Shown in pieces: positions 43,491-63,779 of a stretch of DNA of 63,779 nt. The notes below the pieces were generated by a model. The model was not told the origin of the DNA, did not search any database, and worked only from the letters and a program-made list of their open reading frames with translations. The translations under genes and the position numbers were made by a program. Within the stretch, counting starts at the first letter, position 1, and each line of letters begins with the position of its first letter. This DNA is from Schmidtea polychroa (taxonomy: Eukaryota). The stretch is taken from positions 73,656,222 through 73,720,000 of the forward strand of contig CM097885.1 of NCBI GenBank assembly GCA_044892525.1. The letters run 5' to 3'.

Positions 43491-46400
43491 TCAACTCCTG
43501 GAATGCAAATCATTGATTAGAGATAATAACGGAAACCAACCAATCAAACCCTTACCGAACTCGTATTTACTATAAATGCCTTTGAAGAACTGCTCAAGGG
43601 TGATCGCGAGATTCATGATATCACTGTCTGGCATATTGTAAACCTCAGCATTGAAGAACATTTGCCCGACATCGGAAAGAAAAGTTTTGAGAGAATCAAT
43701 ACCGGACGCATAGATTCCCTGTTTGTATTTGTCCATCATTTGAGCGAGATTAATCGGATCGGTAATAATCTGATAATAATCCGGAACCTAGACAGATCAA
43801 TAGATGATAGGTATAGATGTAATACAAGTTGTCCCCAATTACCTCTTCTGGATCGACGGGATCAATGAATGGCCAGGAGGCCTTGTGATTGATCATATTT
43901 TTCAGCATATGATAGCAAGCTTTCTCGATCTTTTCCGCTGACATTCCATTGCTGGATTTCTTTGGGGCTGGAGCCTTATTGTTGACATCTTCACCGTCAC
44001 CGCTACCGTTACAGTCCTGTTGTTCCTGCTTAACGTTTCCTGTACTGGCGATTGAACTGCGTTTCCGATTGGTGGAACGCTTAGTGCTTGTTAAATATGA
44101 CTCGATTTTATCCACTGATTTTATTCCGTTGCAGGATTTTTTCGGTGCTGGAGCTTTATCATTGTCACCATCTCCACCGTTACAGTATTGTTCCTCGGGA
44201 TTCTTCACGTTTCCTGTACTACTGGTGGTGAGTGAACTTCGCTTCCGATTGGTGGTACGTTTAGTAAACAGATATGGCAAATTATCGACATCTTGATCAG
44301 ACTCGTCGGAATCGGAATTATTGATCGGATCCAATTTTATTGATTCAACTGCCGGTTTTGATTCCTCCACAGTTTGATTGGTTTTCGCAATTCTCGATTT
44401 CTTTCGCAATGGAGGTTTCACTGATGACTTCTGAGATTCCCCTTCGCTGCACTCTCCAACGTCCTCTTCGTCGTCCTTTTCAATTTCACTGAACGGTTTC
44501 TTTTTCACTAACCCGTACTTGGTGTTGTTGCGTTTTTTAGTTCTGTTACGTTTTCTGCTGTGGTTTTTGTCGGGATCTTCATTGCTCGAGGAGTTCTGAT
44601 CGTCTTCGTTACCATCGGAATTGTTATTGACATCGGCAGCACCGACAGTTGAAATCGAACGTCTCGATAGTTTGCTATTGGTTTTGGTAGCCTCATCCAA
44701 TCGGCATTGACAACAGTGCCAATTGGTTCGTCTGATTTGTCTGAGAGGGGGCTCATGGCAATGAGCGTGGAATAATTTATTGCACGAGGTACATTTAGCT
44801 AATTGCTGTTCACCGTTGGAACTGTGGCACACAAAGCACTGTTCATGATGTGAGGTTTGTTGTCGGGTTTTGGATTTGATTGACTGGGTCACTGACTGGG
44901 CGGATGGGGCAACTGTCATAGCAACGGTGTCTGAGTCAGCATCGCGGGCCCTGGAAACGGGCTTGCAATGGGGACAGAACCACTCGCCATCTGGGACATC
45001 GTGTAAGGCCGGTCGCAGGCAAAACGTGTGAAATGCGTGATTACAACTGTCACACAGGAGCATTGAGTTCTCATCTGACGCCTTTCTGCATACTCGACAT
45101 TTGTCGTCCTTTGCCGATTTGCTCCAGCACACGCAAGCATCCAGGAAGGATTGCAGCATATTCAGTCTGGCTTGTGTTTGTGCCTGTTCAACTGCGTTAA
45201 GGAATTCGTTGCGCCCATTGGCTGATTTCAAGGGCACGTTCCAGAACCGCTCATGAACACCGAGGAATACCGACACGAGGGTTTCTTTCATTTCGTTGAG
45301 GGAAACCGCTAAATTGACCCGTTTCTGCCACTCGACATAATCCTCAACACCACCGAGGCTACCCTGTCTGATTGATATTTCTGTTTCCTTCAGTTCCCGC
45401 TTGAATCCCGCCACGAGAAATGACTGCTCATTGGAATCGGCTCCTATCGATGAGTTTGATCGAGTTGCCGGTTCAGTGATTGCTTTGGAAACCGACTGGA
45501 ATTCATCGGCCAATTTAGGCAGTAATGCCTCGAGTTCTGATTTCAATAGGCTCTCCCGGATGCCCTTATCTGAGAGGCAATTGAGCAATTGCTTGAGCTC
45601 ATCGTGAGTTGTGAACATGTTCCATTCGGTGAGCACGTGATCAGTAGGCACCGTACTGCTGCCGACATTCCCAGTACCGGTGTTGACTTGCTGCTCCATT
45701 TCGACATAAATGGCGCCCGGTGCTGAAAGAAAGTGCCAATATCGCCGGAAATGTCGATCGGAACCGAGTGGTTGTATTCGCATCAATTGCTTAGCTTCAT
45801 TCATTGCTGTAAAGTAAGATTTCTGAGATTGTTCCAATAGCTTCTTGTACTGGGTTTCGTCTTTCTCAAGCTTCTGATATTGTCGCTCTTTCTCTAACCT
45901 GCGCTCCCGTTCTTCGGACTCTTTGAGCTTCATTTCTATCGATTGACGCCTTCTGACAACTTGACTCGTGTCGTCAGTCGCTAAGGAGTCGGTTACATCC
46001 CCAGCCGTCGATTTGAGGGTGACATCATCAGTGCCAAACTTGCCCACGATCAATTTGCACATATCCTGCTTGCTTTGTCTGAGGGCCTTCAATTTGTCAT
46101 TGAATTCCTTTGTATCGGCAATCCGTTTCTTATACGCCTCGCACACATCCCGCTGGTAGTCATCAATGAATGAGCTGACAATGTCCAACTCGAGGATTCT
46201 ATTCTGCAACAGCTCCAATACACCGATTTTATCCTCAATGCTCAACTGCTGCAATTCGACAGTTTGTAGTTTCTCGCAAATAGGGCCAGCTATCCGCTTG
46301 TTATGGTTACAGTTCCAGATTTCTGTCGATGTCTGAATAGTAGCGGCAATCAATACCTGTTATTTATGTCCCAAACCCATTCAATCCTACCTCTTCATCA

Positions 46401-48823: not shown

Positions 48824-49894
48824 CTAAAATCTAAATATTCAAATAGTAATTTAAGTTGAACAATTTATAAAAACAAAATAACAAGAAAACATCCCGCCAA
48901 AACTAGAAATTTAAAATATCAGAATTTAAAATAAATAAAGGAATTTACATAACTTACATGAAAATGTGACTAAATATAAAAAAATATTAATCAAACAAAT
49001 TTTTAATTGAAAAGATATCCTAAAATAATTCAAATTTAAATAAAATTTCAGGAATATTGAACATTAAAATAAAATAAATTGTATAAAACAATCTATATAT
49101 GATCATCAGAAATAATAGCGCATGTATTATAAAAGAATTATTAAAATTTTTCAAATTTCCATTAGTTATTAAATATAATTGTTTTGTTAAAGGTGAAGGG
49201 ATTCCGACTTCCTTTTTAAGAAGATATAGCATTCATATAAATAGGTACCAAATGTCAATAAATATTACCTCATCAACGCCAAGTTATAAAGTTGTAAAAG
49301 TTATATGTGATTCTCGTTTCTATAGCCTCCTTAAATGCCTTATTAGTATTAGGATATGTCCCCTACAGAACACGCCCCTACTCCCTGCTAAGGACAAAAG
49401 ATTTCACTAAAAAAATTTTACTTAATACTTTTGTGTAGGTCAACCGCATATCTTTTTACTTTTTACGATTTTCAGGTTTTATAACAACATTTTTTCTGTA
49501 TGTCAATTTTTTTTATAACAACATTTTTTCTGTATGTCAATTCAAATTCAATGATTTTCATAAAAATTTTCAGAGTANNNNNNNNNNNNNNNNNNNNNNN
49601 NNNNNNNNNNNNNNNNNNNNNNNNNNNNNNNNNNNNNNNNNNNNNNNNNNNNNNNNNNNNNNNNNNNNNNNNNNNNNNNNNNNNNNNNNNNNNNNNNNNN
49701 NNNNNNNNNNNNNNNNNNNNNNNNNNNNNNNNNNNNNNNNNNNNNNNNNNNNNNNNNNNGATTAAATAAATTAATTATTAAGTAGGTTACAGACGTACTC
49801 ACATACACTATATAGTTTTTTATTATTCCAACACAAAACCGGTCAAAGAAGAAAAATATATATGGTGGTAAAAAACTGCTTGTGTGCGTGTATG

Positions 49895-50343
49895 TGTTGA
49901 GGTCTCAGTATTTGAGATTCTCAAGGTTGCACTGGCTACTATATGGGTCTATCGAAATATAAAAACGAAGTCGAATATTTATTGAAATATAAAATATTAC
50001 CAATACAAATTTTCCAAATAAAATGATTCCACTGAAAAATGATGCGTGTTATGTAGGTGTTGTATGTTGTATATGCGTGTTGTGTATGATTGCAGAAGTT
50101 TAGAACGTTTCTGTATATGGATACAGAAACGTTCTAAACTTCTGCAATCATACACAACACGCATATACAATATACAACATACAACTAATAAGGATCTACC
50201 CTTTTTAGTTTGCTAAGAACGGTAAAAATTTTTGGGCGGCCACTACTGATTTTGGGTCACTATTTATATTAATTTTTCTGCGCGCTGGTGTATGGAAAAC
50301 ATATGTTATTATTAAAAATATTATGTTTTATTTGCTTTTTAAA
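49895..50343 (-). mobile_element. Older, diverged LTR fragment of the same family, interrupted by the young element
   Basis: Starts tgttgaggtctc like the young LTR and shares gaacgtttctgt, actaataagga..cctttttagt, ggt.aaa.tttt.gggcg and ctatttatatt blocks in the same order. Confidence 0.8.
50067..50170. repeat. Perfect 50-bp inverted repeat with a 4-nt loop
   Basis: 50067-50116 is the exact reverse complement of 50121-50170; loop atgg; arms extend ~9 nt further with one mismatch. Confidence 0.95.
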
Positions 50344-51446
50344 TGTTGAGGTCTCGATATTCGGGAACACTCAACTTACTGGTTCTTATATATGTACAAA
50401 TATATCAAAAGACAAAGTGATTTATAAAACTTTTATTATAAAGAAAAATTTACCAATATGAATTTGTTGCTAGATTACAAAAATCCAAAAATCCTTCAAA
50501 TATCCAACCGAATATGCTTGTATGTACTGTGTGAATGTTATGTATTCTCTTGCTGTGTTGCGTGTAGGCTTTTGAACGTTTCTGTTTGTCTGTTCGAGTT
50601 TTAGCACTAATAAGGATTAACCTTTTTAGTATGTTAACGCGGTTAAAATTTTGGGGCGAAGAAAATGAATTTTACCTCGCTATTTATATTATTTTTGTAT
50701 ATGAAATTAAATTGATATATTTTTTAAGTATACTTATATTTTAAAGTATTAATTAAAAATTAATCAAAGTGTTGATTATAGAAATTATATATGTTTTAAT
50801 TTTAATTATTAAAATGTCTAAGCATATGTTTTATAATTTTATTTATTTTGTTCAAGTGTTAATTATAGAAATATCTTTAATTTTAATTATTAAAATATCT
50901 AAGCTTATGTTTTATAATTTTATTTATTTTGTTCAAGTGTTAATTATAGAAATATCTAAGCATATGTTTTGTAATATTCTAAGATTAATTATTTTGAAAT
51001 ATCCACTTATATTCTAATGTTAATTACTTATATTCTTATTATTCTAGAAACATATGTTTTATGATTTTCAATATTATTTATTTTGTAATTCTAACTGATA
51101 TTAATTAAGATTATTTAATTAGTCCCCATAATATGTTTTATTTACATGAAATAAATAAGATACAATAATAATTGTCATAATAATAATCCACACACAATAA
51201 TAATAATCCATTCCACAACACAATAATAATTGTCAAAATAATAATTCAAAAATAAATAAGATATACAATAATAATTGTCCAAATCATGAATCAATGTGCA
51301 TAGTTAATAATCAAATGATAATCGTCATTGTTTTGACTTTGGTTATCTGGGTTCTACGTAGATGTTGACCCTGAACTTGTTGCTGCCCGTTCTGTAGTAG
51401 TGTGTTAGTTCAAATTCCTCAATTCTTCTTCCTCTATCATCCAACA
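50344..51446 (-). repeat. 3' LTR (predicted 1103 bp, TGTTG...CAACA)
   Basis: Identical to 62699-63779 through 51424. Inner boundary inferred at 51446 from inverted termini and the adjacent purine run. TATA box tataaata at 50681-50688; AATAAA near 50430 on the minus strand. Confidence 0.8.
50769..50975. repeat. Tandem ~81-87-bp repeats in LTR U3 (also present in the 5' LTR at 63124-63330)
   Basis: Units beginning gtgtt(g/a)attatagaaat at 50769, 50856 and 50937. Confidence 0.8.
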
Positions 51447-51912
51447 CTCCTCCTAGGGCCGATAAAGTAATGTCCTCATTACCTTTATCGCTGAGGACCA
51501 ATTCAATTTCGCAACCGTTTATATACATTGTTGCCCTTTGGAATCCTTTCTTTAACGCTAATTTTAACACATCACCATCAATGATTCGTCTACCGAAGTG
51601 TTGATGTATTTCTTTTTCCGAGATAGTGGATCTTCCATCTTTGATGATGAACATTGGCTCCTCCAACTCGACATTTGGCTCTGGTCCTAGTTCGTCATCT
51701 ATCTGCATTGCTTCGCTCGGTGAGAAATATTCTTCATCTGAGTCTAAATCACATTGTGGGTCAGCATAGTTGTAACTAATTGATGTCTGAGGTTCTTCCT
51801 TTATTTTGATTGCTTGTGGTTTTTTGTCCTCTTTGACGAATATGATGTCATCATCGCTGTCCATTAGTTCATCTTCAAAGGTACGTCTGCTCCCATCTTT
51901 ATTGAATTTCAA
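51343..51912 (-). CDS. Accessory ORF5: acidic protein of unknown function overlapping the PPT and U3
   Basis: 189 codons from TTG; frame open upstream to 51999; first ATG internal (MDSDDD); homologous relic at 11220-12030. Confidence 0.7.
   Translation of the reverse strand: MKFNKDGSRRTFEDELMDSDDDIIFVKEDKKPQAIKIKEEPQTSISYNYADPQCDLDSDEEYFSPSEAMQIDDELGPEPNVELEEPMFIIKDGRSTISEKEIHQHFGRRIIDGDVLKLALKKGFQRATMYINGCEIELVLSDKGNEDITLSALGGVLDDRGRRIEEFELTHYYRTGSNKFRVNIYVEPR
51447..51454 (-). promoter_or_regulatory. Putative polypurine tract
   Basis: AGGAGGAG directly before TGTTGG on the minus strand; the relic copy has AGGGGGAA-TGTTGG at the homologous position (11929-11942). Confidence 0.65.
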
Positions 51913-53222
51913 TTCTCTTTGTGAGGGTTCGATATATATATCTTCCTCAAATTCCTCTGGCTCATCCTGTTTTCTTCTATTGGACTGAGTTGATGGCCAT
52001 TATTTTCCTTTTGGAATGCTGTCATGTCCCACCTTATGACTTCTTCCCATTGCTTTTCGACCAAGAGGTAAATGACTTTTGCGATTAGTGTTGTATCTTC
52101 TGCTGAGAACGGTTCGGGTTTTTTGAGGATGTTGTTGATTGCTTTGTCTTTCTTCCATTTTGGGTGTGTTGCGATTACTTTGTATGCGAGATTCGATAGT
52201 TTGATTCTGTGTGGTGCTACATTTTTGACGAATGAACACATGAACACATCTTCAGCTAATTCTCTGACTCCCATGACATTGTACAGATCTAATGTCAGCG
52301 TCTTGAGTTTCTTTATTATTTCGTATCCCACAATGATTTTTCCGAGTAGCAGCTTCTGTATGTCGATCAGCGCTTGGTATTCGTCTTCATTTCCTCTTAT
52401 TGAATCCCTGTCTGCTCTTGTCTTCTCCGGGTAATAATGTTGGATTTTGGTGCGTGGAGTCACCTTTTTATTGTATACGATTTCTCCTCTAAAATTTCTG
52501 ATGCATATCTCTACTGGTCTGAGATTGTTATTGATGTCGCATACTTCTTTGACATCGACGAACATGATTGCCCTTTGTCGTTCGGGGATTGACAACTGTT
52601 GATGTGTGAATGACATCCGTTTCGAGATGAAATCTTGATGTATTACGATTTCCGACTGTATTATCTCTAATTCCCTGAAAGGATTGGGTATGGTTGGGAC
52701 ATATAGAATTTCGATAGCCATCACACAGGGTAAATTGTTCATTTGGATGACCAAATTGTTGAAATCGTTTGGCATGCTTCGATTCGTCTTCATCGTCTTG
52801 ATCACCACCGTGCAGTTGCTTGTTGTTATAATAGGGATTCGTTGTTGGCAAATTGAAACCTCCGTTCTGGTCATATGGAATAGTATTCTATGTGGGACTT
52901 TTCTTCCTTCATTTGCTGCGATATCTGCATTTTCGAACATATCATAGGTGCCTATTATATCTCTCAGCTTTATCCTTCGGGCTTCATTAAATTTAACTAA
53001 GTGCATTTCTCTTTCTTCGATTTCGCACTTCATTTCATTGGGTATGCAGACCTGGTTAGGGATACTTCTGATGGTGATTGGTGAGCCGTCTGAGGTGATT
53101 TTATTTTGCAAATTTTTGTAGAAACTGTGGTATAGTTTTTGAATGGAGCAGCTGTATTGTTGGACTGGACGTTGTATGGGATTGAATGGTTTGGGATTGA
53201 CTCTGGTATTGTTGGATTGCAT
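51909..53222 (-). CDS. Accessory ORF4: unknown N-terminal domain plus REX4/ISG20-like DEDDh exonuclease fold, probably inactive
   Basis: Likely start MQSNN (ATG 53222, preceded by tttttttag). FVDVKEV..VEICIRNFRGEIVYNKKVTP..IQHY..IQKLLLGKIIVGYEIIKKL..FSAEDTTL..IYLLVEKQWE aligns by eye with REX4/ISG20. Confidence 0.75.
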   Translation of the reverse strand: MQSNNTRVNPKPFNPIQRPVQQYSCSIQKLYHSFYKNLQNKITSDGSPITIRSIPNQVCIPNEMKCEIEEREMHLVKFNEARRIKLRDIIGTYDMFENADIAANEGRKVPHRILFHMTRTEVSICQQRIPIITTSNCTVVIKTMKTNRSMPNDFNNLVIQMNNLPCVMAIEILYVPTIPNPFRELEIIQSEIVIHQDFISKRMSFTHQQLSIPERQRAIMFVDVKEVCDINNNLRPVEICIRNFRGEIVYNKKVTPRTKIQHYYPEKTRADRDSIRGNEDEYQALIDIQKLLLGKIIVGYEIIKKLKTLTLDLYNVMGVRELAEDVFMCSFVKNVAPHRIKLSNLAYKVIATHPKWKKDKAINNILKKPEPFSAEDTTLIAKVIYLLVEKQWEEVIRWDMTAFQKENNGHQLSPIEENRMSQRNLRKIYISNPHKEN

Positions 53223-53367
53223 CTTTCTAAAAAAACAATATAAACATACATATTTACAGCGCATTTGAGGCTTTACCTTATACGCTTCAATATAAATAAA
53301 AATATAAATATATGTGAGTTTAAATATTATCATTGACCAATAGGAATTGAAATTATCTATATTATTT

Positions 53368-54192
53368 TTAAACCAATGAGGACATTGTGTATTGTCCTGG
53401 CCTATACTTATCCAAATGAAAATGCCCTGGTACATTTTTGACCAGTCGGTGCCGATACCGCTGCCTTTTCCATTTGTATTTTTTATACACTTGAACACTG
53501 GTGATAATAGCTAAAATACTCAATGCTAAAATGCTTGATGAAATTACATAGAAAGGCCATCGTGGTTTAGCAGGTTTTACTTGAAATGCTCTTAGTTCAT
53601 CCCAGTTATTTATGATTATGGGTTTTCCCGTAGGTAATTTTATCAGTTTCCTATCAAACTGTCTTAGATTTTTTATTATTAATTTTTTATATACTTGTCT
53701 AGTTACTTTAAATGTCGTTTCTCTGTCTGTGTTTGTTATCGTTTGTAATGACTGTTGGGTGGATGCCGAATTTGTGGTAGTTATTGTTATGGTGGTTGTT
53801 GGCATGCTATTATCTATGGGCTTATATATGTTTGTGATAGTGGTTCTTATTCTTTTGCACCTTACTTGTGATGTGTCAACTAAGGTGTTCCATTGTGCAC
53901 AAAGTGTGTAATTAGTGTTAGGCTGTAGATTTATGAATTCAACATTGTCTCCTCTTTCAAATTCATTAGTTGATCTATTCTCAATTTTTTTCATAAGCTT
54001 GGGTATATCGTCCCCAGTTTCTAGATATAAGTCTCTTATGGGTGATTTATTCAAGTTATATACTTTAATTTTATACGGTGAAATGTTGATTAAAATATCT
54101 TCCTCCATGTATTTTACTGAGTGTATGCTCTCATTTTCTACTTCAGTTGATTTACATAGCCCTATAATTGTTAAAAAGATCGATCGCTGCCA
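53368..54192 (-). CDS. Accessory ORF3: type-I membrane protein (FN3-like domain, Thr-rich stalk, TM, basic tail)
   Basis: NLQPNTNYTLC (FN3 LxPxTxY), PTTTITITTTNSAST, TM WPFYVISSSILALSILAIITSVQVY, then KKYKWKRQR. ATG at 54108, but the frame is open to 54192 with signal-like RSIFLTIIGLCKS. Confidence 0.7.
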   Translation of the reverse strand, partial: WQRSIFLTIIGLCKSTEVENESIHSVKYMEEDILINISPYKIKVYNLNKSPIRDLYLETGDDIPKLMKKIENRSTNEFERGDNVEFINLQPNTNYTLCAQWNTLVDTSQVRCKRIRTTITNIYKPIDNSMPTTTITITTTNSASTQQSLQTITNTDRETTFKVTRQVYKKLIIKNLRQFDRKLIKLPTGKPIIINNWDELRAFQVKPAKPRWPFYVISSSILALSILAIITSVQVYKKYKWKRQRYRHRLVKNVPGHFHLDKYRPGQYTMSSLV

Positions 54193-57100
54193 TCATCAGT
54201 GCTTTTTGTGATCGTAATCCATATTTGTGAGGTGGTTTTTCTATTAACTCTGTTTCTGATAGTTTGCATCTATTAACATGTACTATTATCGGATCCTCAT
54301 TTTTATGTTTTTGTAAATGCAGGTTTTCATGTACTACTTTTACTACTTCGTATGGTCCTTTAAATGGTCTTGCTAATTTAGTTGTTTTGCCTTTACCTAC
54401 CTGTGGAGACATAAGTCTAACCTTATCTCCCACTTTAAAATTATGAGGTTTGCTATTTTTATCATAATCTGCTTTATATTGTTCTTGTCTGAATTTAACT
54501 TTTAAATTTGCAACCTTATATACCTCTTGTAATCTCTCTTGCATTAATGTTACATTATCTGGCGCATCTAAATATTGTGATACTCGAGGCTCAAAAATTG
54601 TATCAATCGGTGTCGCAGGCTCTCTTAAGAACATTAGAAAATATGGTGAATATCCCGTTGTCTCATTTGGTGTGATATTATGGATGTATGTGCATTGATT
54701 AACGTATTCATCCCAATCATTTTGGTTTTTTCCCACAAACACAGCTAATCTACTTAGCAATGTCCCATTGAATCTCTCTACTAAACCATCGGTCTGAGGG
54801 TGGTATGCTGTTGTGTTGATTTTATGCATGTTAAATATGTTAGCTACTCTTTTTATAGTTTCACTCATGAAATTTTTCCCTTTATCTGTTAATAATTTTC
54901 TCGGTGTACCGATTTTAAAGATTATTTTTTCCACAAGTAATTTAGCTACTGTTTCTGCTGTTTCATCTTTTGTAGGAAATGCCTCTGCCCATTTTGTAAA
55001 ATAATCGCTAAAAACTAGTATGTGCTTATTCCCATTAATTGTTGTGGGTAGTTTACACAAAAAATCCATTGCGCACAGTTCCATTGGTGATGTTGTAGCT
55101 GGGATTGGATGTAAAGGTGCTTTAGTTTTTGTTCCTGTATTTTTTCTAGTTGCGCATATTGTGCATGCATTACACCATCTCTTGACATCCTTTTTCAAAT
55201 CGTCCCAATAATATTTTTGCATCAATCTGCTTGCTGTTTTCCTACTTGATAAATGACCTCCTAGAGCACCATCGTGATATTGTAATAGAAGAATTTGTCT
55301 TAATCTTTGTGGTACTACTATTAATTGTTTACCGCTAAAATCCTCAATAACAATTAACTTCTTACAGATTTTATACTTTTGGTTAGTTCCCTTTTTTATT
55401 TCTTCTCTTATCTTGAAGAGTTCTGGATCTTTCATTTGTTCCTCATATATTTCTATTGGTTTTTCAGTTACTAATGCAAAAACTTCTAGTGCTCCTAACT
55501 CTGGAATTCGTGATAATGCATCTGCATTCCTGTTTATTCTACCTGGTTTGTATGCAATCTTTATGTGCATGTCTTGTATTTTCATTGCCCATTTTAACAG
55601 TCTACTGGATGTATCTTTATGTTTCCATAACCCTTCTAATGGCTTATGGTCTGTTCTAATTACTACTTCAGTTCCATATATGTATGGTTTAAATTGTTTT
55701 AATGCAAAAACTATAGCATAACATTCTTTCTCAATTGTTTAGTACCTAATCTGTGCTCCTTTTAATGTTTTGCTTGCATAAGCTATTACATAATCTTTAC
55801 CCTTTTCCTCTTCTTGTCCTAAGACTGCCCCTACGGCCTTCCCACTGGCGTCTGTCATGACAATGAACTGTTTTTTAAAGTCTGGGTATCTTAGTATCGG
55901 TGCTGTTATTAATTTTTCTTTTAGTTGATCAACAGCTTTTTGGTGTTCATCTTTCCATTTCTTTTGTGGCTTGTTAATTTTATCGTTAATCTCTTGTACT
56001 ATTAACACTCCTTTACTCTCTCCCTTTGTTTTGACTCCTTTTGTTAACTCAATTAGTGGTGCTGCTATATTTGCATAATCTTGTATGAATTTACGATAAT
56101 ATCCTGTGAGACCTAAAAATCCCTGTACTTGTTGTAATGTTTTTGGAACTGGGAATTTTTTAACTACTTCAATTTTATCGGGATTAGGTATTATACCATC
56201 TACTGTAACTATATGTCCTAAGAATAATGCTGAAGGTTCTGCCCATTTACACTTAGTGGGTTTTATTTTGATTTTTGCTTTTCTTAATCTTTCTAGTACG
56301 TTAGCTATATCTTTTAGATGTTCCTCAAATGTTTTTGATGAAATTAATATATCATCCATATATACTGCGCAATGTTGTACGTCTACTAATACTGTATTCA
56401 TTAAACGTTGAAATGTTGCTGGCGCATTAGTTAACCCAAAAGGTAATCTTGTATATTCATATAAACCGTCTTCTATCACAAAAGCTGTCTTTTCCGCATC
56501 CCCTTCTTCCATTTGAATTTGCATGTAGCCTTTATTTGCATCTATTACTGTGAAATATTTAGTATCACTAAGTTTATCATATTGTTCTTGTGCTTTTGGG
56601 AATGGGTATGAGTCTTTTACTGTTACATCATTTAATTTACGATAATCAATGCACATTCGAATTTCCCCGTCTTTCTTTCTAACTGGTACGATAGGTGATG
56701 CCCATTGTGAAAAACTTTGTTTTATTACGCCTGCCTCTTTTAATTCTTTAATTTGTCGTTTTATTTCCTCCCTCAGTTTATATGGTACACTATAGGGTCT
56801 CTGTTTTATTGGTCTAGCATTCCCTGTATCGATTACATGTTTGATAATGTCAGTATCTCCTAAATCAAATTCGTGTTTTGCAAAAACATCACTGTATTCG
56901 TCAAGTAATATTTGTAGTTGTAGTTGTTGTGTTTCATTTAGATAATTATTATTTATTTTAATTTTATCATAAAATTTGATATTATTCGCTCTACTCTGTT
57001 CGACCATTCTTTCACTGACATCCTTCGTCATCGACATCTCACATACTTCAAATGTTTGTTCTAATTCACCTTTGAACAACTTTCCCAATTTTGTACCTTT

Positions 57101-60100
57101 ATGAATTTTTACTTTATTTCTTTCGTAATTCGCGATTCTTATTGGAATTATCCCATTATTTGGAATTACACACTCGTCTGTTAACATTACATTATGATTT
57201 CGTGATATTGCCGTTTCAGGCTCAAAAATGAAAGTGTCCTCACTTTTAACATTAACTTTTACTGGAATTATATGATCACTTTGATACTCTAGTTCAAATG
57301 TCTCTAATGCAATTACCTCAGTAAATCTTGCGTCTTGATATATTGCCTTCCGTTTGACTGTACTATCCGTTAAATCGATTACACAGTTTTTTAACTTTTT
57401 GAGTATGTCCATCCCAAGGACACATACGCATTTACATTCTGCTACTACCTTGAAGACATGTTCAACCACTTGATCCGAAAAGTGGACTGTTAATTCGATA
57501 TCTCCTTTTAATGGTATGTAATGTGATGATAATGAAATTACTCTATCTCTTGTGCTCACGATATTTTTCTTTTGGTTTCCGGTTAACTGATCTTCACGAA
57601 TCATAGAAGCTGCTGCTCCTGTGTCACATAATGCCTTTATTATCGTATCATTTATCACTATTTGTAATTTAGGCCTTGCTTCATTTAACCCTTCTAATAT
57701 ATCGTCAAGTTCTAACCCGTAACATCCATAAGTTTTCCTTGGAACACAATGACAATTACCATTTTCACCTGGGATTCTAATTTCAATATTATTTCTTAAT
57801 TCTGTCAATTGTTCTCTTTGATTATCATATAACCCAATATGTGGTTGATCAATATTTTCTGATTTGTTTGCCTCGTCATCTTTCTCGTTGGTGATCATTA
57901 TTTCACCCTCTTCCCTTCGACTTTTCATCCGTTTGATTTCCTTATCGTGCCTCGCAGTGATCAAATATTTGGCTATAAATGGACATAAACATGCTATCAT
58001 TTTATATGAATTACCAAAAACTTGTCTCAGTTGTCTTAACGAAACTAATGATGAGCAAATCATTTTCAATAGTGCTAATGTATAATATATACCCAATATA
58101 GTGGAAAACGTATTTCCGAGAATCGCAAAATATCCCCATATGCTGTATAATACTCTATACACAACTTTCTTGAAGTGCTCTTTTGATAATAATACGTCAA
58201 AGTTGTAATTTCCTCCATAACTATTTTCGATGATTTTGTTTACCATGATAGAAAGAACTTTTTCTTTTTCATGAGGAAATAACATATGTTTTCTGGCGCT
58301 CTCTATCGCCTCTCTCGTATACATCCCATTGTTATCCATTTCGTTGACTTCCTGAAATTCTAACTTTTTCTCAAGTTCAGTTAGTTCTAGTTTTTGTGGT
58401 TTAGTCGCTTCTTTTCTATCTGACATTGTAATCCACATATCATCATTTATTTTGTATAATGGATCTAATAGATTAGTACATTTATCAATTTTTCTCGGAA
58501 CATAGTCTTTATCTGTTAATATCCTTGTTATTGGTTGGAGGTATACAGTTTCTCCTTTATACACTACTGGCAATTCGTTTGTGCACTTATTATTCGTTGC
58601 TAACGATACGCTAACCGGTTTACACTGAAATGTTTGTATTACTTCACCGACAACTCTTGCAAATGTCCCTTTTTCTGCAAATAAAATTGGTGCCATTAAA
58701 TCTGGGTTTGTGACTGCAACCGCCATCTTTGTCCTTAATATTTCTCTATTAAGTTTACAATCGTTTGCGATAGTTGCTTGGTACACCTTGTCCAATTGTA
58801 CTAACTGATGATGATAGAAATAGTCAATTTTATTATTAAAATATGATGCTAGCTTGACGTCGAATTTATCTATTCTCGATTTTGCCTCTTTAATTTCACT
58901 TCCGCTGATATAAATTCCCTCATAATTTGTTTGTACGACTGCCTTGCCGCATTTTATACTTTCACCTTTTCCCACAAATCTCATCGCTTCTGTCTCAGAA
59001 TCTGACATGTATATTGTTGGGGTATCTCTCTCTTGAATTATCGTAGCTCGTCGCTTTTGATCTTTGATGTTCTTGGATTCTACATCCGTAAACTGTTTAC
59101 CTCGTATCGTTCTGAATTTCAGTGTCTTTAGTTTAGTTAGATGGCATTCGTATTTATTCACTCTGTATATGATCATTGACTCGCCTGTATCACAGCTTGT
59201 CTCATCTAATGTGCAGAACTTATGTGTCATCATTTTCTTTGATGCACTATCAAATGACGCTTTGAATTTCCTTAATTCAATGTAATACTGCCGTCTCACT
59301 ACAATATTGTCTGCCACATGCCCCCATATTTTATACCTTCCTCCTTCACAATATCCTCCTGTTGATGACCATCCCACGACATTTACTAATTGTCTTACTC
59401 GTGCTCCTACTTGAGCATCTAACTCAAATCCATCCGGCGTTTTTATCTTTTTTGTTTTAAATGCATTTTCGCATTCAACTGGCGTTATTATTATTGCTTC
59501 TGGTGCCCATGTTGGAGTTAATATTGTTCTCGCTATTTTATTACATACAAAACTTTCCTCTGAATATTTAACGATACATTCTCCTGCCTCAGTGTGAATG
59601 AAATCAGATTCCTGATATATATGGAAAATCTTGGGATCTGCTACAATTAATTTTGTTGGATTAGCCTCTGGGCAATTTTCTACATCTAGCAATGAATATT
59701 TTTGTCCCCACTTGGGATTCTGACAATCATACGCTATGATCGCATTATTCCCTTTTATCAGATCTAATAACAATGTTATTACTATAATTACTATTGACAT
59801 TGTCGACTTTCTTTCTTTTTGACTTGGTTTCATAGTTGTTTTATTTACTAGATTTTTTACTGTTTCCTCCGTATCATCTATTTCTACGTTAATATTATCT
59901 TCTACGCTTTTTTGAGCACTTTCGATTAGACTCTCATCATACAGTATTTTCCATCCTCCCTTTAATTTTATCCATGGCATAGCATCTATCTTTAGTTTAT
60001 TATATATCATTTTAGCGATATTTTCTATTTGATTCTTTGGATTCAATCGCAAAAGTTTCTTGTATCTTGCTATTAAATATGCCATTGCCGTAATCACTTT

Positions 60101-60334
60101 ATCTCGATTAACTCCTGTTGTAAATAATATCTTTAACACTGTCTCTTCATTTGCTTCCTCTGCACTCAATTCTCTAATCTCTTTTTCCATTAATTTAATC
60201 TTTTTAACTATATTTTCTATTAACGCTGATGGTTTTGCTTCCGGAAATCGTCTCATATTCATTGCTTTAACTAACTCTGTTATCATTTTTATATCCTTGT
60301 CATTATCCTGATTTTTTGGGACTTCCTGTCTCAT
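54152..60334 (-). CDS. env-pol: Env-Pol polyprotein: helical leader, signal peptide, chuvirus-like fusion protein, TM, protease, RT, RNase H, integrase (one in-frame TAA at 55739-55741)
   Basis: Signal peptide 59800-59750; AYDC 59734-59723; TM ~58140-58050; protease LCDTGA ~57626; RT SQWASPIVPVRKKDG..RMCIDYR, LPFGL, YMDD 56362-56351; RNase H TDASG..YASKTL..Y*TIEKEC..TDHKPL; integrase HHCC, MDF/TDKG/ERFN, GPY motif. Confidence 0.93.
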
Positions 60335-60374
60335 ATTATTTGCAATATCTCTTAAACGCTCTGCTGCCTTTCTG

Positions 60375-62453
60375 TCATCTGACTTTTCGAGGCCTTCCTC
60401 TACTTCGTCTCATCGTCTCTGCGTCCTGCATATTTGCTTGTTTCGCAATTTTTTCTATTGTCTCATGTAAATTATCATATTTAGTCTCAATAGGTTTAAA
60501 GATTTCATCGCTAACTGTTGGTGACCTCATTGCTCCTCCTGAAGAAGCATCCCATAATCTAAATAATTTGTCATAGTCATTTTCGTCGTTTATACCCAAT
60601 TCTACTGATGGAATTGATGCATCCATTTCATTATTTTCTTGCCTTTCTATTACGGCAGTAATAATATTATTATCGATAACGTTTACCCCGTAGTCGATTA
60701 TATATTCGTTATTCATCATTTCTACACCGTTAAAATACAGTTTTACTTTATCATTATCTCCCAATTTCTCGGGCCAATTAGCTCTGGCCATCTGTTTCAC
60801 TTTATTCACTTTTGTGCAAACATGTACCCCTGTACTACGCATAAGTATTCTTGAAAGGTCTTTTGCCTCAATAGTTATATTCAATGACTCATGTAATTTC
60901 TGATTTTTTCTCACAAACTCACCATAACATTTTATCATTTCTTTCAATTCTATTTCTAGTTCAAATACTCTTGTCATATTTTGTCTCTTTACCATTATTG
61001 GTATCAAATTTCTCAAATATTCTAAGTCAATTCCTTCGACTTGAACTCTATTTATTATACGCAATGTCTCATTATCATCATAAGGCCATTTCTCTAATGT
61101 CTCTTTCAATTCCTCTTTTAATTCTTTACATCTATTTGCTTCTGCAAGAAATATCTCATCCGCTTCTCTTGCTTCACGAAACTCATCATTATCTATATCT
61201 ACATCATTAGTAAAACACTGAAACTCATTTAATGACATTTCTAACTTTCTCTCAATAAGTCTCCCATATTGAGTTTTAAATTCTTTTAATTCCTCTCTCA
61301 AACTGTTTATTTCATCATTAGCTGATATCAACTCAGCACTATTAATCTGTTTTATCTCAGGCTCATTTTTAAATCTCACTCTATTAGGCGATTCGCTTCG
61401 CGCATTATTACATACTTTAGCTAAGTGACCATATTTTTGGCAATTATAACATTTGATTTGTCCATTAAAATTTACTTTATCTCTACCATCATTATTATAA
61501 GGGCTTCCTCCCCTTTCTCTATATGAATTCTGTCTATATGGACTTGTCTGTCTACGTCTCAAATCATTTGTATTATCTCCATTATCATATCTATTACTTC
61601 TATCATATTTATTATTTCTCAAATTATTTCTACTAAAATCGACTCGATTATCTCTCGTATAATTAGTTCTATTGTATTCATATCGATTATCTCTATCAAA
61701 AGTGTTTCTATTGTTTCTATTCTCAAAGTTTCTGTTTCTCGCATTATCAAACCTCCTCCTGTTTTCAGGCGATTGACTTCTATCAGGACTCGGGCTTACC
61801 CTTCGTCTATTTTTTACAAAGTTTAAATATAGTTGTTTCATCTCCTCCCAGGGGATGTTGTCATCTGACTTACCCAACTCAGATTTTACCTCTATGGGTT
61901 TTTGGATTTCCATTGCATCTACATGTGAACTAAATCTATCTCGTTGTATTGCTTCTATACGCTTAGCTTTATGAACTAATTCATTTAAATTACCATATTC
62001 TACCATAATTAGCGCTTTATATAAATATTTTTGTATACCATTCCAAAACTGATCCTCAATTAATTTTGCTGTGTGCTCACCTGCACCAAATGCCTTTTTC
62101 GCTAACTCCGTAATTGTATATACATATTCACCAACTGATTCTCTAGTACCTTGATATCTGTTTCTAAATTTTTGAACATTTATCTTTTGTAAATCGCTAT
62201 CGATTACTATTTCTGCCCTCAGATATCTTACGAGTTGATCAAAATTATTTCCTTTACACTCTAAGTTATTGTATGCCTGTAACGCATAACCTTTTAAATA
62301 TAATGGGATTCTCATTTTTAACTCATCAGGTGTCCAACCACAAGCTTCTGCATACTGAGCGATCTCAGTGAAAAAATCGTCGAACTTTTCAGGCTCTCCT
62401 CTATATGGTTCTACTGGTAAAATTTTTATGTAATTATTATTATTATTATTCAT
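60375..62453 (-). CDS. gag: Gag (capsid, R/N/D/S-rich region, CCHC zinc knuckle, coiled coil, ubiquitin-like domain), 692 aa
   Basis: LKMRIPLYLKGYALQAY..RYQGTRESVGEY (retrotransposon capsid); CYNCQKYGHLAKVC; long C-terminal extension. Confidence 0.92.
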   Translation of the reverse strand: MNNNNNNYIKILPVEPYRGEPEKFDDFFTEIAQYAEACGWTPDELKMRIPLYLKGYALQAYNNLECKGNNFDQLVRYLRAEIVIDSDLQKINVQKFRNRYQGTRESVGEYVYTITELAKKAFGAGEHTAKLIEDQFWNGIQKYLYKALIMVEYGNLNELVHKAKRIEAIQRDRFSSHVDAMEIQKPIEVKSELGKSDDNIPWEEMKQLYLNFVKNRRRVSPSPDRSQSPENRRRFDNARNRNFENRNNRNTFDRDNRYEYNRTNYTRDNRVDFSRNNLRNNKYDRSNRYDNGDNTNDLRRRQTSPYRQNSYRERGGSPYNNDGRDKVNFNGQIKCYNCQKYGHLAKVCNNARSESPNRVRFKNEPEIKQINSAELISANDEINSLREELKEFKTQYGRLIERKLEMSLNEFQCFTNDVDIDNDEFREAREADEIFLAEANRCKELKEELKETLEKWPYDDNETLRIINRVQVEGIDLEYLRNLIPIMVKRQNMTRVFELEIELKEMIKCYGEFVRKNQKLHESLNITIEAKDLSRILMRSTGVHVCTKVNKVKQMARANWPEKLGDNDKVKLYFNGVEMMNNEYIIDYGVNVIDNNIITAVIERQENNEMDASIPSVELGINDENDYDKLFRLWDASSGGAMRSPTVSDEIFKPIETKYDNLHETIEKIAKQANMQDAETMRRSRGRPRKVR

Positions 62454-62678: not shown

Positions 62679-62696
62679 TCCCGGTTCGCGGCACCA
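62679..62696 (-). promoter_or_regulatory. Primer-binding site (tRNA-Phe- or tRNA-His-like)
   Basis: TGGTGCCGCGAACCGGGA, 2 nt inside the 5' LTR end CA. Confidence 0.85.
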
Positions 62697-62698
62697 AA

Positions 62699-63779
62699 TG
62701 TTGAGGTCTCGATATTCGGGAACACTCAACTTACTGGTTCTTATATATGTACAAATATATCAAAAGACAAAGTGATTTATAAAACTTTTATTATAAAGAA
62801 AAATTTACCAATATGAATTTGTTGCTAGATTACAAAAATCCAAAAATCCTTCAAATATCCAACCGAATATGCTTGTATGTACTGTGTGAATGTTATGTAT
62901 TCTCTTGCTGTGTTGCGTGTAGGCTTTTGAACGTTTCTGTTTGTCTGTTCGAGTTTTAGCACTAATAAGGATTAACCTTTTTAGTATGTTAACGCGGTTA
63001 AAATTTTGGGGCGAAGAAAATGAATTTTACCTCGCTATTTATATTATTTTTGTATATGAAATTAAATTGATATATTTTTTAAGTATACTTATATTTTAAA
63101 GTATTAATTAAAAATTAATCAAAGTGTTGATTATAGAAATTATATATGTTTTAATTTTAATTATTAAAATGTCTAAGCATATGTTTTATAATTTTATTTA
63201 TTTTGTTCAAGTGTTAATTATAGAAATATCTTTAATTTTAATTATTAAAATATCTAAGCTTATGTTTTATAATTTTATTTATTTTGTTCAAGTGTTAATT
63301 ATAGAAATATCTAAGCATATGTTTTGTAATATTCTAAGATTAATTATTTTGAAATATCCACTTATATTCTAATGTTAATTACTTATATTCTTATTATTCT
63401 AGAAACATATGTTTTATGATTTTCAATATTATTTATTTTGTAATTCTAACTGATATTAATTAAGATTATTTAATTAGTCCCCATAATATGTTTTATTTAC
63501 ATGAAATAAATAAGATACAATAATAATTGTCATAATAATAATCCACACACAATAATAATAATCCATTCCACAACACAATAATAATTGTCAAAATAATAAT
63601 TCAAAAATAAATAAGATATACAATAATAATTGTCCAAATCATGAATCAATGTGCATAGTTAATAATCAAATGATAATCGTCATTGTTTTGACTTTGGTTA
63701 TCTGGGTTCTACGTAGATGTTGACCCTGAACTTGTTGCTGCCCGTTCTGTAGTAGTGTGTTAGTTCAAATTCCTCAATT
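62699..63779 (-). repeat. 5' LTR (truncated by the window; predicted to end near 63801)
   Basis: Matches 50344-51424 with no differences noticed. Confidence 0.95.

What the first reader, a model, noticed from the sequence alone, without database searches (positions are those of the whole stretch)
57360..60334. Chuvirus-like fusion protein fused in frame upstream of the protease: Pol tethered to the envelope tail
After a 178-aa leader come a signal peptide (MSIVIIVITLLLDLIKG|N) and an ectodomain with the AYDC, LLDVENC, YCEGG, CKLNREIL, GEVIQTFQCKPVSV and CTNELPV..YLQPITRIL pattern of chuvirus/Jingchuvirales glycoproteins (class III, gB-related). A TM and ~100 aa of tail lead with no stop into DTG protease and RT. 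Predicted topology is cytosol-lumen-cytosol, leaving PR-RT-RH-IN anchored on the inner membrane face. Pol could then be packaged via Env instead of Gag-Pol, as in a flavi/alphavirus-style polyprotein. I found no N-x-S/T sequon in the ectodomain apart from NPT, which is odd for a viral glycoprotein.
Basis: partly seen in the sequence, partly recalled or inferred. Interest (0 to 1): 0.92.

Follow-up and report, generated by a model that had tools for sequence, protein, structure and literature searches.

The report
Retrovirus-like element with mid-genome envelope gene
This is a very young, nearly intact copy of a gypsy-type endogenous retrovirus whose envelope gene, taken from a chuvirus-like RNA virus, sits between gag and the protease in the same reading frame. 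That layout is real and conserved, but it was already published for nematodes, bryozoans and flatworms.

Summary
On the minus strand, one reading frame starting at 60334 runs without a stop through five parts. These are a 178-aa leader, an internal hydrophobic signal, a 535-aa ectodomain, one membrane helix with a ~118-aa tail, and then the protease and RT. The ectodomain matches Pfam Monjiviricetes_fusion at E=6.6e-90. Its AlphaFold model (pLDDT 86) matches chu-related virus glycoproteins (Foldseek E=1e-42) and herpesvirus gB (E=8e-15).

The gene lies inside an LTR element of about 13.5 kb. The element has LTRs that are 100% identical over the 1,081 nt that can be compared, a tRNA primer-binding site, a gag with a zinc knuckle, PR-RT-RH-IN and two further ORFs.

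At least ten divergent relatives from metagenomes (25-39% identity in G) have the same gag-G-PR-RT-RH-IN order. Several hold it in one ORF, so this is a family trait and not a chimera.

The cytosol-lumen-cytosol topology is supported. Packaging of Pol through the Env tail is untested. Relatives fuse gag to env as well, so a Gag-Env-Pol polyprotein is the simpler reading.

The layout is published: Sacco et al. 2022 for nematodes; Chary and Hayashi 2026 for Nematoda, Bryozoa and Platyhelminthes. I rate it a new member of a known kind.

The possibly new point is that the leader looks Bcl-2-like (Pfam E=2.5e-6, below the curated cut-off).

The parts
62699..63779 (-). 5' LTR, cut by the end of the window (about 22 nt missing)
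   Evidence: 100% identical to 50344-51424 at an offset of 12,355 nt. The full length of ~1,103 nt is inferred from the 3' copy.
62679..62696 (-). Primer-binding site, 18 nt, two bases after the LTR end
   Evidence: Read from the sequence next to the LTR end; it starts with TGG. No tRNA gene lies in the window to match it against.
60375..62453 (-). gag (692 aa) with one CCHC zinc knuckle
   Evidence: ORF. Pfam zf-CCHC at aa 333-348, 20.6 bits against a cut-off of 20.8. Homologous to the N-terminal parts of P0002, P0003, P0008, P0017 and P0018, which continue into G.
54152..60334 (-). env-pro-pol gene: leader, G, tail, PR, RT, RNase H, IN. Broken once by an in-frame stop; no frameshift.
   Evidence: 2,061 codons with 1 internal stop. 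Colinear and of equal length with L001-L003. Domains.
59801..60334 (-). Leader, aa 1-178, possibly a Bcl-2-like domain
   Evidence: Pfam PF00452 E=2.5e-6, 28.4 bits, below the cut-off of 31.4. A two-sequence profile against PDB gives mostly Bcl-2 family chains at E 0.03-0.6. Its C-terminal half is kept in frame with G in L004.
59744..59800 (-). Internal signal sequence or signal anchor, aa 179-197
   Evidence: Hydrophobicity peak 1.96. Helix in the model. Nine of the eleven fused relatives scanned show a hydrophobic segment here at the threshold used; in the other two it is seen by eye. In most relatives it has no Met in front.
58139..59743 (-). Ectodomain of a chuvirus-like class III fusion glycoprotein
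   Evidence: PF24664 E=6.6e-90. AlphaFold2 pLDDT 86.4. Foldseek: chu-related virus G at E=1.3e-42, herpesvirus gB at E=7.6e-15. 14 conserved cysteines.
58037..58138 (-). Transmembrane segment, hydrophobic core aa 733-766
   Evidence: Hydrophobicity. It lies within one continuous predicted helix, aa 718-773. One such segment is present in every fused relative.
57683..58036 (-). Tail between the membrane helix and the protease, aa 767-884
   Evidence: Its first ~45 aa are helical, are modelled at pLDDT ~90 and are covered by the Pfam G profile. The rest has no match.
57389..57682 (-). Retroviral aspartyl protease
   Evidence: Pfam RVP E=3.4e-7, 30.9 bits against a cut-off of 20.7. The D-T-G triplet is seen in the translation.
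56207..56683 (-). Reverse transcriptase
   Evidence: Pfam RVT_1 E=1.9e-35. The Y-M-D-D box is at aa 1325.
55508..55957 (-). RNase H domain (approximate bounds)
   Evidence: Pfam RT_RNaseH_2 E=3e-23 and RT_RNaseH E=6e-12. Colinear with relatives.
54797..55315 (-). Integrase: H2C2 zinc domain and catalytic core
   Evidence: Pfam Integrase_H2C2 E=2.3e-18 and rve E=9.1e-10.
53368..54108 (-). Downstream ORF, 246 aa, threonine-rich with a C-terminal hydrophobic segment; +1 frame relative to IN
   Evidence: No Pfam match even at E<=1. No BLAST match in the relatives.
51909..53498 (-). Last ORF, 529 aa, +1 frame relative to the previous one, function unknown
   Evidence: A homologue follows IN in L002 (25% identity, E=5e-16). 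Weak PDB matches to ISG20-type exonucleases (E 0.39 and 0.97) are not significant.
51447..51454 (-). Short purine run directly before the 3' LTR, a candidate polypurine tract
   Evidence: Read from the sequence. It is followed by the inverted copy of the LTR's terminal bases. Inferred, not tested.
50344..51446 (-). 3' LTR, about 1,103 nt, with TG...CA ends
   Evidence: The inner end is inferred, because the 5' copy runs off the window.

Best explanation
The finding is the env-pro part of a young Ty3/gypsy-type (Metaviridae) endogenous retrovirus of the published 'gag-env-pro-pol' layout. Its envelope gene was captured from a chuvirus-like negative-strand RNA virus. It encodes a class III, gB-like fusion glycoprotein that sits inside the polyprotein.

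**Most likely working (inferred)**
1. Ribosomes translate gag. A minority continue into the env-pol frame, which overlaps the end of gag in the +1 frame. Alternatively, they start at its own ATG.
2. The internal hydrophobic segment (aa 179-197) takes the nascent chain to the ER membrane.
3. The ectodomain is threaded into the lumen and folds with seven disulfides.
4. The single membrane helix (aa ~733-766) stops transfer.
5. The tail, PR, RT, RNase H and IN are therefore made on the cytosolic face, next to Gag.
6. Signal peptidase and the element's own protease then cut the parts apart.

**Shown:** the reading frame, the domain identities, the fold, the two hydrophobic segments and the conservation of the order in relatives.

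**Inferred:** the membrane topology, the processing and the way the env-pol frame is reached.

This copy cannot make full-length Pol by itself, because its env-pro-pol frame carries one in-frame stop.
For: - **Element anatomy:** LTRs identical over 1,081 nt at a spacing of 12,355 nt, TG...CA ends, a primer-binding site, gag with a zinc knuckle, and PR-RT-RH-IN with H2C2 and rve domains.
- **G identity:** PF24664 E=6.6e-90. Of 1,207 library hits, the nearest are G domains embedded in polyproteins, followed by free ~650-aa G proteins at 22-26% identity.
- **G fold:** the model has pLDDT 86.4. The top BFVD matches are chu-related virus glycoproteins (E=1.3e-42, TM 0.52-0.66). The top 50 PDB matches are all herpesvirus gB (best E=7.6e-15 over ~630 columns). 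A family profile against PDB sequences hits only gB (E from 0.013).
- **Same order in relatives:** P0004, P0007 and P0016 are G-PR-RT-RH-IN in one ORF. P0002 and P0003 are gag-G-PR. P0018 holds gag, G and IN.
- **Topology:** there are two hydrophobic segments here. Nine of the eleven fused relatives scanned show both at the threshold used, and the other two show the N-terminal one by eye. The internal signal has no conserved Met in front of it, which points to polyprotein expression. The C-terminal membrane region is a single helix in the model.
Against: - There are no expression or protein data, so topology, cleavage sites and the route into the env-pol frame are all inferred.
- gag is in a different frame here, while several relatives have gag and G in one frame. 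The junction may therefore be a defect of this copy and not a programmed shift. I found no shared shift motif at the ORF ends.
- The copy carries one in-frame stop in env-pro-pol.
- The host could not be named. Assignment to the published nematode, bryozoan or flatworm clades is therefore untested.
- I ran no dedicated signal-peptide or topology predictor.
Confidence: 0.8

Rival explanations
1. Pol is not brought into particles by a Gag-Pol fusion. Instead it stays tethered to the cytoplasmic tail of Env, and budding through Env-rich membrane carries it in.
For: In this copy gag ends with a stop, and the env-pol frame has its own ATG 41 nt downstream of it. G, tail, PR and RT are one chain with an odd number of membrane passes after the ectodomain.
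Against: Relatives fuse gag to G and PR in one ORF. Here the env-pol frame is open for 25 codons upstream of its ATG and overlaps gag by 35 nt. A Gag-Env-Pol chain is therefore at least as likely, and nothing tests packaging.
Confidence: 0.12
2. The in-frame fusion has no structural role. Env is made from its own spliced or internally initiated message, and Pol comes from another message or is cut off at once. Pol is then never membrane-tethered in any useful sense.
For: A Met directly precedes the hydrophobic segment in this copy (aa 179), so a free-standing Env with an N-terminal signal peptide could be made. Retroviruses normally make Env from a spliced RNA (established knowledge).
Against: Most fused relatives have no Met at that place. 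The tail-PR junction is kept in frame across relatives at 25-39% identity. No splice evidence is available in either direction.
Confidence: 0.2
3. A chance chimera or assembly artefact. On this reading, a chuvirus-derived endogenous viral fragment lies inside an unrelated retrotransposon only in this copy.
For: Chuvirus glycoprotein fragments are common in invertebrate genomes and often lie near LTR elements, according to the abstracts of PMC7642597 and PMC10084718 listed.
Against: The same order and frame are found in at least ten divergent relatives on separate contigs. There is no stop across G-PR-RT, all 14 conserved cysteines are kept, and no N runs lie in the element.
Confidence: 0.02
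4. A host-domesticated fusogen (syncytin-like) that merely lies next to transposon remains.
For: The intact ectodomain with its conserved cysteines would also fit a gene kept by the host.
Against: The gene lies between identical LTRs, is in frame with PR-RT, and is followed by IN. Identical LTRs point to a very recent insertion, not an old domesticated locus.
Confidence: 0.02

Closest known systems
Nematode endogenous retroviruses with a captured RNA-virus glycoprotein (Sacco, Lau, Godinez-Vidal and Kaloshian 2022, J Gen Virol 103:001739; title and citation seen; paper not held)
   Same: A metavirus (Ty3/gypsy) backbone with env placed before pol, and a glycoprotein gene taken from an RNA virus. 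From my memory of the abstract, unverified here: a continuous gag-env-pro-pol ORF and a G related to nyami- and chuviruses.
   Different: The host of this window is not identified. Here gag is in a separate +1 frame. The leader in front of G looks Bcl-2-like, and two further ORFs follow IN. Whether these points differ from the published elements could not be checked.
GAG-ENV-POL 'ancient errantiviruses' with HSV/gB-type Env (Chary and Hayashi, eLife 2026, PMC13524379)
   Same: Ty3/gypsy elements with a class III gB-type Env between gag and pol in Nematoda, Bryozoa and Platyhelminthes. [quoted passage not shown]
   Different: The paper treats the three genes as ORFs with gaps allowed. Its text holds none of the terms 'fused', 'single ORF', 'polyprotein', 'in frame' or 'same frame'. 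I could not test membership of this copy in one of its clades, because no supplementary files are held.
Mosquito BEL/Pao elements with a chuvirus glycoprotein ('Anakin'; Dezordi et al. 2020, PMC7642597)
   Same: The same glycoprotein family was captured by an LTR retroelement.
   Different: The backbone is BEL/Pao, not Ty3/gypsy. The element here has RT_RNaseH_2 and Integrase_H2C2 domains and no BEL/Pao-specific Pfam family. As far as I know, env in those elements is not embedded upstream of the protease.
Glycoproteins of Jingchuvirales (chuviruses) and other Monjiviricetes, Pfam PF24664
   Same: Family membership by profile (E=6.6e-90), the same 14 cysteines and the same overall fold.
   Different: Sequence identity is only 17-26%. 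The viral proteins are free-standing, ~650 aa long, with an N-terminal signal peptide. Here the protein is an internal segment of a retroelement polyprotein.
Herpesvirus glycoprotein B (class III fusion proteins)
   Same: The fold matches over ~630 aligned columns, including the long central helix and the membrane-proximal helices.
   Different: Identity is 10-12% and TM-score only 0.37-0.45, so the domains are arranged differently or sit in another conformational state. Trimer formation and fusion loops were not examined.
Atlas virus of hookworms (Merchant et al. 2022, PMC9094657)
   Same: A nematode retrovirus-like element whose Env was taken from a negative-strand RNA virus (abstract).
   Different: That Env is a phlebovirus-type GN-GC (class II) protein, and the element belongs to a different clade.
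Polyproteins of flaviviruses (established knowledge)
   Same: It works like them. Internal signal and stop-transfer segments thread one chain back and forth, so that envelope parts face the lumen and enzymes face the cytosol.
   Different: There is no sequence or evolutionary relation. Here there are only two membrane segments, and the enzymes are retroviral.

Membership tests
Ty3/gypsy LTR retroelements (Metaviridae) | Long terminal repeats with TG...CA ends, and a tRNA primer-binding site next to the 5' LTR | tested here: met
   The target-site duplication is not testable, because the 5' end lies beyond the window.
Ty3/gypsy LTR retroelements (Metaviridae) | Domain order PR-RT-RNase H-IN, with a gypsy/retrovirus-type RNase H and an H2C2 plus rve integrase | tested here: met
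   Pfam RVP, RVT_1, RT_RNaseH_2, Integrase_H2C2 and rve in that order.
Ty3/gypsy LTR retroelements (Metaviridae) | RT groups with Metaviridae in a phylogeny | not tested
Only the domain content speaks for it.
gag-env-pro-pol endogenous retroviruses (nematode NERV; GAG-ENV-POL errantiviruses) | env lies between gag and pol | tested here: met
   The same order is seen in L001-L003.
gag-env-pro-pol endogenous retroviruses (nematode NERV; GAG-ENV-POL errantiviruses) | Env is a gB-type class III glycoprotein of RNA-virus origin | tested here: met
gag-env-pro-pol endogenous retroviruses (nematode NERV; GAG-ENV-POL errantiviruses) | gag, env, pro and pol are in one continuous ORF | tested here: not met
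   env, pro and pol share one frame, which is broken by one stop. gag is in another frame (+1) with a 35-nt overlap. Relatives P0002, P0003 and P0018 do have gag and env in one ORF.
gag-env-pro-pol endogenous retroviruses (nematode NERV; GAG-ENV-POL errantiviruses) | Host is a nematode (or bryozoan or flatworm), and the element falls within the published clades | not testable with these tools
   Host unnamed. The window's proteins are not on record. The host BAZ1A-like exon has only distant named relatives. No supplementary sequences are held.
Monjiviricetes fusion glycoprotein (Pfam PF24664; chuvirus G) | Profile match above the curated cut-off over most of the profile | tested here: met
   302 bits against a cut-off of 27; the best stretch covers profile positions 239-634 of 653.
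Monjiviricetes fusion glycoprotein (Pfam PF24664; chuvirus G) | Conserved cysteine framework, a signal sequence and a C-terminal membrane anchor | tested here: met
   14 of 14 conserved cysteines. Hydrophobic segments at both ends.
Class III viral fusion proteins (gB, rhabdovirus G, GP64) | Multi-domain gB-like fold with a central helix | tested here: met
   Foldseek probability 1.00 and E=7.6e-15 to gB. The model has a 48-residue central helix.
Class III viral fusion proteins (gB, rhabdovirus G, GP64) | Trimer with two hydrophobic fusion loops, and membrane-fusion activity | not tested
   Only a monomer was modelled, its coordinates could not be inspected, and activity is not a computation.
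Bcl-2 family (Pfam PF00452), for the 178-aa leader | Profile match above the curated cut-off | tested here: not met
   28.4 bits against a cut-off of 31.4, although E=2.5e-6. The L004 fragment scores E=0.021.
Bcl-2 family (Pfam PF00452), for the 178-aa leader | Helical-bundle fold with conserved BH1 and BH2 regions followed by a tail anchor | tested here: inconclusive
   HMMER aligns aa 64-133 with the BH1-BH2 half of Bcl-xL and A1. A hydrophobic segment follows ~50 aa later. The single-sequence model is useless (pLDDT 40.6), and its fold search is meaningless.

The most novel reading that the evidence does not exclude
The 178-aa 'leader' may be a captured Bcl-2-family domain. Its tail anchor would double as the internal signal or anchor of the captured glycoprotein. 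The endogenous retrovirus would then carry a cell-death regulator fused to the front of its Env. In addition, this family may reach its downstream frames by programmed +1 shifts placed at different points in different members.
Probability: 0.3. Interest if true: 0.7.

Novelty: new member of a known kind. Interest (0 to 1): 0.38.

Why it matters
This is a clean and very young example, with identical LTRs and only one stop in 2,061 codons, of a retroelement that placed a captured RNA-virus fusion protein inside its polyprotein. Copies like this are the best material for describing three things from transcripts and peptides. They can show how such a chain is threaded through the membrane and cut. 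They can show how the Gag, Env and Pol amounts are set. They can also show how often retroelements have become enveloped by gene capture.

It does not open a new category, because the layout is published. The leader's likeness to Bcl-2 would add something new if deeper alignments confirm it: a retroelement that carries a regulator of cell death.

Tried and rejected
- **Exact look-ups.** I looked up the window's env-pol product and gag in the public gene index. Neither is on record.
- **Naming the host.** I tried a BAZ1A-like exon. The best named relatives are only 25-30% identical and come from insects, fish and a rotifer. The nearest hit is an unnamed run assembly. The window has no tRNA or Rfam match.
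- **Leader homologues.** A word-indexed search found none. Two scans of metagenome contigs, one with the protein and one with a two-sequence alignment, found nothing and did not even recover L004.
- **Leader structure.** The single-sequence model has pLDDT 40.6. Its fold search has no match at E<=0.001.
- **G against PDB.** The single G sequence against PDB sequences gave nothing. Only the family profile reached gB.
- **Downstream ORFs.** Neither has a Pfam family, even at E<=1. The ISG20-like matches of the last ORF are not significant.
- **Frameshift motif.** A common motif at the ORF ends of this element and three relatives was not seen.
- **Troyka elements.** Considered from a literature hit and rejected. 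They have CG...CG ends and 3-bp duplications, and none of them has an envelope gene.
- **Sacco et al. 2022.** The paper is not in the held library.

For a gene that I later recognised as broken, and for junctions in relatives that may be breaks, these amount to places of breaks.
- None was entered into a tool or used as evidence.
- The consensus lines that the alignment tool printed were not used.
Full report
**1. What is there**

The finding lies on the minus strand. ORF listing and translation show a frame that opens with an ATG at 60334. It runs without a stop through the whole range of the finding and on through the reverse transcriptase.

Pfam places these domains along it:
- Monjiviricetes_fusion (PF24664): E=6.6e-90, 302 bits against a cut-off of 27.
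- A retroviral aspartyl protease at aa 885-982.
- RVT_1 at aa 1218-1376.
- RT_RNaseH_2.
- Further on in the same frame, Integrase_H2C2 and rve.

A hydropathy scan finds three strongly hydrophobic stretches in the chain, and one of them lies inside the protease domain. The two that flank the ectodomain are aa 179-197, directly after a 178-aa leader, and aa ~733-766, at the end of the glycoprotein. About 118 residues separate the second segment from the protease. This includes the lack of N-glycosylation sequons in the ectodomain. There are 0 observed, shuffles give a mean of 3.1, and P(0)=0.034. Three relatives have 1-2, so it is a mild family trait.

**2. The surroundings: a complete LTR element**

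- **LTRs.** Direct repeats at a spacing of 12,355 nt are 100% identical from 50341/62696 up to the end of the window. The repeat ends in ...CA. In the 5' copy it is followed, two bases later, by an 18-nt primer-binding site that starts with TGG.
- **3' LTR inner end.** It is most likely at 51446, where a short purine run is followed by the inverted copy of the LTR terminus. That gives LTRs of ~1,103 nt and an element of ~13.5 kb. The last ~22 nt of the element lie beyond the window.
- **Genes, in order on the minus strand:**
  - gag: 692 aa with a CCHC knuckle.
  - env-pro-pol: 2,061 codons.
  - A 246-aa threonine-rich ORF with a C-terminal hydrophobic segment.
  - A 529-aa ORF.
- **Integrity.** The env-pro-pol frame is broken once, by an in-frame stop, and has no frameshift. 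It is colinear and of equal length with its relatives. gag is in another frame. The env-pol frame is +1 relative to it and overlaps its end by 35 nt. Identical LTRs mean a very recent insertion.

**3. Identity and fold of the glycoprotein**

- **Library search.** A search of 1.84 billion representatives with the G segment gave 1,207 hits at E<=0.001. The nearest (25-39% identity) are G domains embedded in long polyproteins. About a hundred free-standing ~650-aa proteins follow at 22-26% identity.
- **Cysteines.** In an alignment of 103 of these, all 14 ectodomain cysteines of the window's protein fall on invariant or nearly invariant cysteine columns.
- **Model.** AlphaFold2 with that alignment gives a confident model (pLDDT 86.4). 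It has a 48-residue central helix and one continuous helix over aa 718-773.
- **Fold searches.**
  - Against predicted viral structures, Foldseek returns chu-related virus glycoproteins first (E=1.3e-42, TM 0.52-0.66).
  - Qin-, xinmo-, nya- and rhabdo-like glycoproteins follow, and then gB.
  - Against PDB, the top 50 are all herpesvirus gB (best E=7.6e-15, ~630 columns).
- **Sequence profile.** The family profile against PDB sequences hits only gB (E from 0.013).

'Chuvirus-like, class III, gB-related' is thus supported by independent sequence and structure tests.

**4. Is the fusion to the protease a family trait or an accident?**

It is a family trait.

- A search restricted to long proteins found three relatives with G and protease domains in one protein.
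- Their contigs read as follows:
  - L001: gag-G-PR, then PR-RT-RH-IN, then further ORFs.
  - L002: gag-G-PR, then RT-RH-IN followed by further PR-like and ankyrin-like matches, then a further ORF.
  - L003: the same order, split over more ORFs.
- From the representative search:
  - P0004 is G-PR-PR-RT-RH-IN in one 2,855-aa ORF.
  - P0007 and P0016 carry G, RT, RNase H and IN in one ORF. P0007 also has a protease match; P0016 had none at the threshold used (E<=1e-4).
  - P0011 and P0013 are partial versions.
  - P0003, P0008, P0017 and P0018 carry gag homology upstream of G in the same protein, and P0018 also carries IN.
- All of them come from metagenome or run assemblies. One was binned by mistake as a Flavobacteriaceae MAG.
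- Nine of the eleven fused relatives scanned show a hydrophobic segment at the start of G at the threshold used; the other two show it by eye. All show one at the end of G. In most of them no methionine precedes the first segment. It therefore acts as an internal signal of a polyprotein and not as the start of a separate Env.

**5. How it most likely works**

*Shown:* one chain holds leader, signal, ectodomain, one membrane helix, tail, PR and RT.

*Inferred:*
- The internal signal targets the chain to the ER.
- The ectodomain folds in the lumen.
- The membrane helix returns the chain to the cytosol.
- The enzymes are made on the cytosolic face beside Gag.
- Signal peptidase and the element's protease separate the parts.

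Relatives join gag to env, and in this copy the +1 overlap would allow a Gag-Env-Pol chain.

One pattern is unexplained. All 3 frame changes between successive ORFs in this element are +1, and so are all 9 in L001-L003. That makes 12 of 12, or about 0.0002 by chance if +1 and -1 were equally likely. Two caveats apply: one of these is an intergenic gap rather than an overlap, and some downstream ORFs may be independent genes. L001 and L002 have exactly one such change between gag and RT, at the PR/RT border. This element also has exactly one, at the gag/env border. This would fit programmed +1 shifting placed at different points. However, I saw no shared motif at the ORF ends, and assembly errors in the metagenome contigs cannot be excluded.

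**6. The leader**

The 178 residues in front of the signal are not anonymous.

- **Pfam.** Pfam Bcl-2 (PF00452) matches them at E=2.5e-6. The match covers profile positions 17-100 of 100 and scores 28.4 bits, just under the curated cut-off of 31.4.
- **PDB, single sequence.** HMMER aligns aa 64-133 with the BH1-BH2 half of Bcl-xL.
- **Closer relative.** L004 (G 43-64% identical) keeps the C-terminal half of the leader in frame with G, and gives a weak Bcl-2 match by itself (E=0.021).
- **PDB, two-sequence profile.** A profile of the two leaders returns about 50 Bcl-2 family chains among its best 60 PDB matches. All align to the same region, at E 0.03-0.6. A ribosomal protein S8 match at E=0.011 competes with them.
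- **Position of the hydrophobic segment.** It follows about 50 residues after that region, which is where Bcl-2 proteins carry their tail anchor (established knowledge).
- **Evidence against.**
  - The 36-38% relatives show no match to the leader.
  - No free-standing homologue was found.
  - The structure model failed.

I rate a true Bcl-2 fold at roughly even odds. I found no paper in the held library that describes such a domain in an LTR retroelement.

**7. Comparison with what is known**

- Chary and Hayashi (eLife 2026) report that Ty3/gypsy elements of Nematoda, Bryozoa and Platyhelminthes carry only HSV/gB-type Env, arranged GAG-ENV-POL. They also report that these elements are not monophyletic. 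Some gB-type ectodomains in their set are flanked by two transmembrane domains. [quoted passage not shown]
- They credit the first report of the flipped order to Sacco et al. [quoted passage not shown] That paper is not held. My memory of its abstract, unverified, is that it describes a continuous gag-env-pro-pol ORF.
- The layout is therefore known.
- What I could not settle is the host phylum. The window holds animal genes: a BAZ1A-like exon, a PMCA exon and a pogo/Tc5 transposase. The nearest named relatives of the BAZ1A-like exon are only 25-30% identical.

**8. Verdict**

- **Observation:** confirmed.
- **Interpretation:** partly supported. Identity, fusion and topology hold. Packaging through Env is untested and is not the simplest reading.
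- **Novelty:** a new member of a known kind.
- **Interest:** modest. It is raised somewhat by the youth and near-intactness of the copy, the possible Bcl-2-like leader and the +1 pattern.

Slips on my side are listed under 'tried and rejected'.

Noticed in passing
window 59801-60334 (minus strand): The leader in front of the glycoprotein signal matches Pfam Bcl-2 (E=2.5e-6, 28.4 bits, cut-off 31.4). It aligns with the BH1-BH2 half of Bcl-xL and A1. A hydrophobic segment follows where Bcl-2 proteins have their tail anchor..
   Followed up: partly
window 51909-62453; L001, L002 and L003 (whole loci): Every frame change between successive ORFs is +1: 3 of 3 in this element and 9 of 9 in three relatives. 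The overlaps are mostly short and no shared motif was seen at the ORF ends. It could be programmed +1 shifting or assembly error..
   Followed up: partly
window 51909-53498 (minus strand); L002 17080-17979: The last ORF of the element (529 aa) has a homologue after IN in L002 (25% identity, E=5e-16). It has weak, non-significant PDB matches to ISG20-type exonucleases (E 0.39 and 0.97)..
   Followed up: partly
window 53368-54108 (minus strand): A 246-aa ORF after IN has a threonine-rich stretch and a C-terminal hydrophobic segment followed by a basic tail. It has no family match. The long relatives P0004, P0007 and P0016 also have hydrophobic segments after IN..
   Followed up: partly
window 10980-11200 (plus strand): A short decayed fragment is 55-71% identical at protein level to the C-terminal part of the element's last ORF. 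It lies far from the element, near a PMCA exon. It is probably a remnant of a related copy..
   Followed up: partly
window 50184-50276: Just outside the 3' LTR lies a 93-nt stretch that is 76% identical to an internal part of the LTR. The element may have inserted beside the remains of an older related LTR. An N run lies at 49578-49759..
   Followed up: no
window 26572-27583 (minus strand): A fragment of a different retroelement: RT and RNase H at 27-29% identity to this element's..
   Followed up: no
window 30432-31901 (plus strand): An intact-looking pogo/Tc5-type DDE transposase ORF of 489 aa, with CENP-B_N, HTH_Tnp_Tc5 and DDE_1 domains..
   Followed up: no
window 43750-46353 (minus strand); 8987-9550 (plus strand): Host genes. 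One is a 2.6-kb exon of a BAZ1A/ACF1-like protein (WSD plus PHD) at ~47% G+C in a ~30% G+C background. The other is the C-terminal exon of a plasma-membrane calcium ATPase. The nearest named BAZ1A relatives are only 25-30% identical..
   Followed up: partly
L001, L002, L003; P0002, P0004, P0005, P0013: Relatives carry two or three aspartyl-protease-like domains in a row, and some show weak ankyrin-repeat matches within pol. In the window's protein, a weak second protease-like match (Spuma_A9PTase, E=7.7e-5) lies between PR and RT..
   Followed up: no
P0007 (NCBI HBK71150.1): A 2,627-aa G-PR-RT-RH-IN polyprotein is deposited as a hypothetical protein of a Flavobacteriaceae metagenome-assembled genome. 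This is almost certainly a binning error, a eukaryotic contig placed in a bacterial bin..
   Followed up: no
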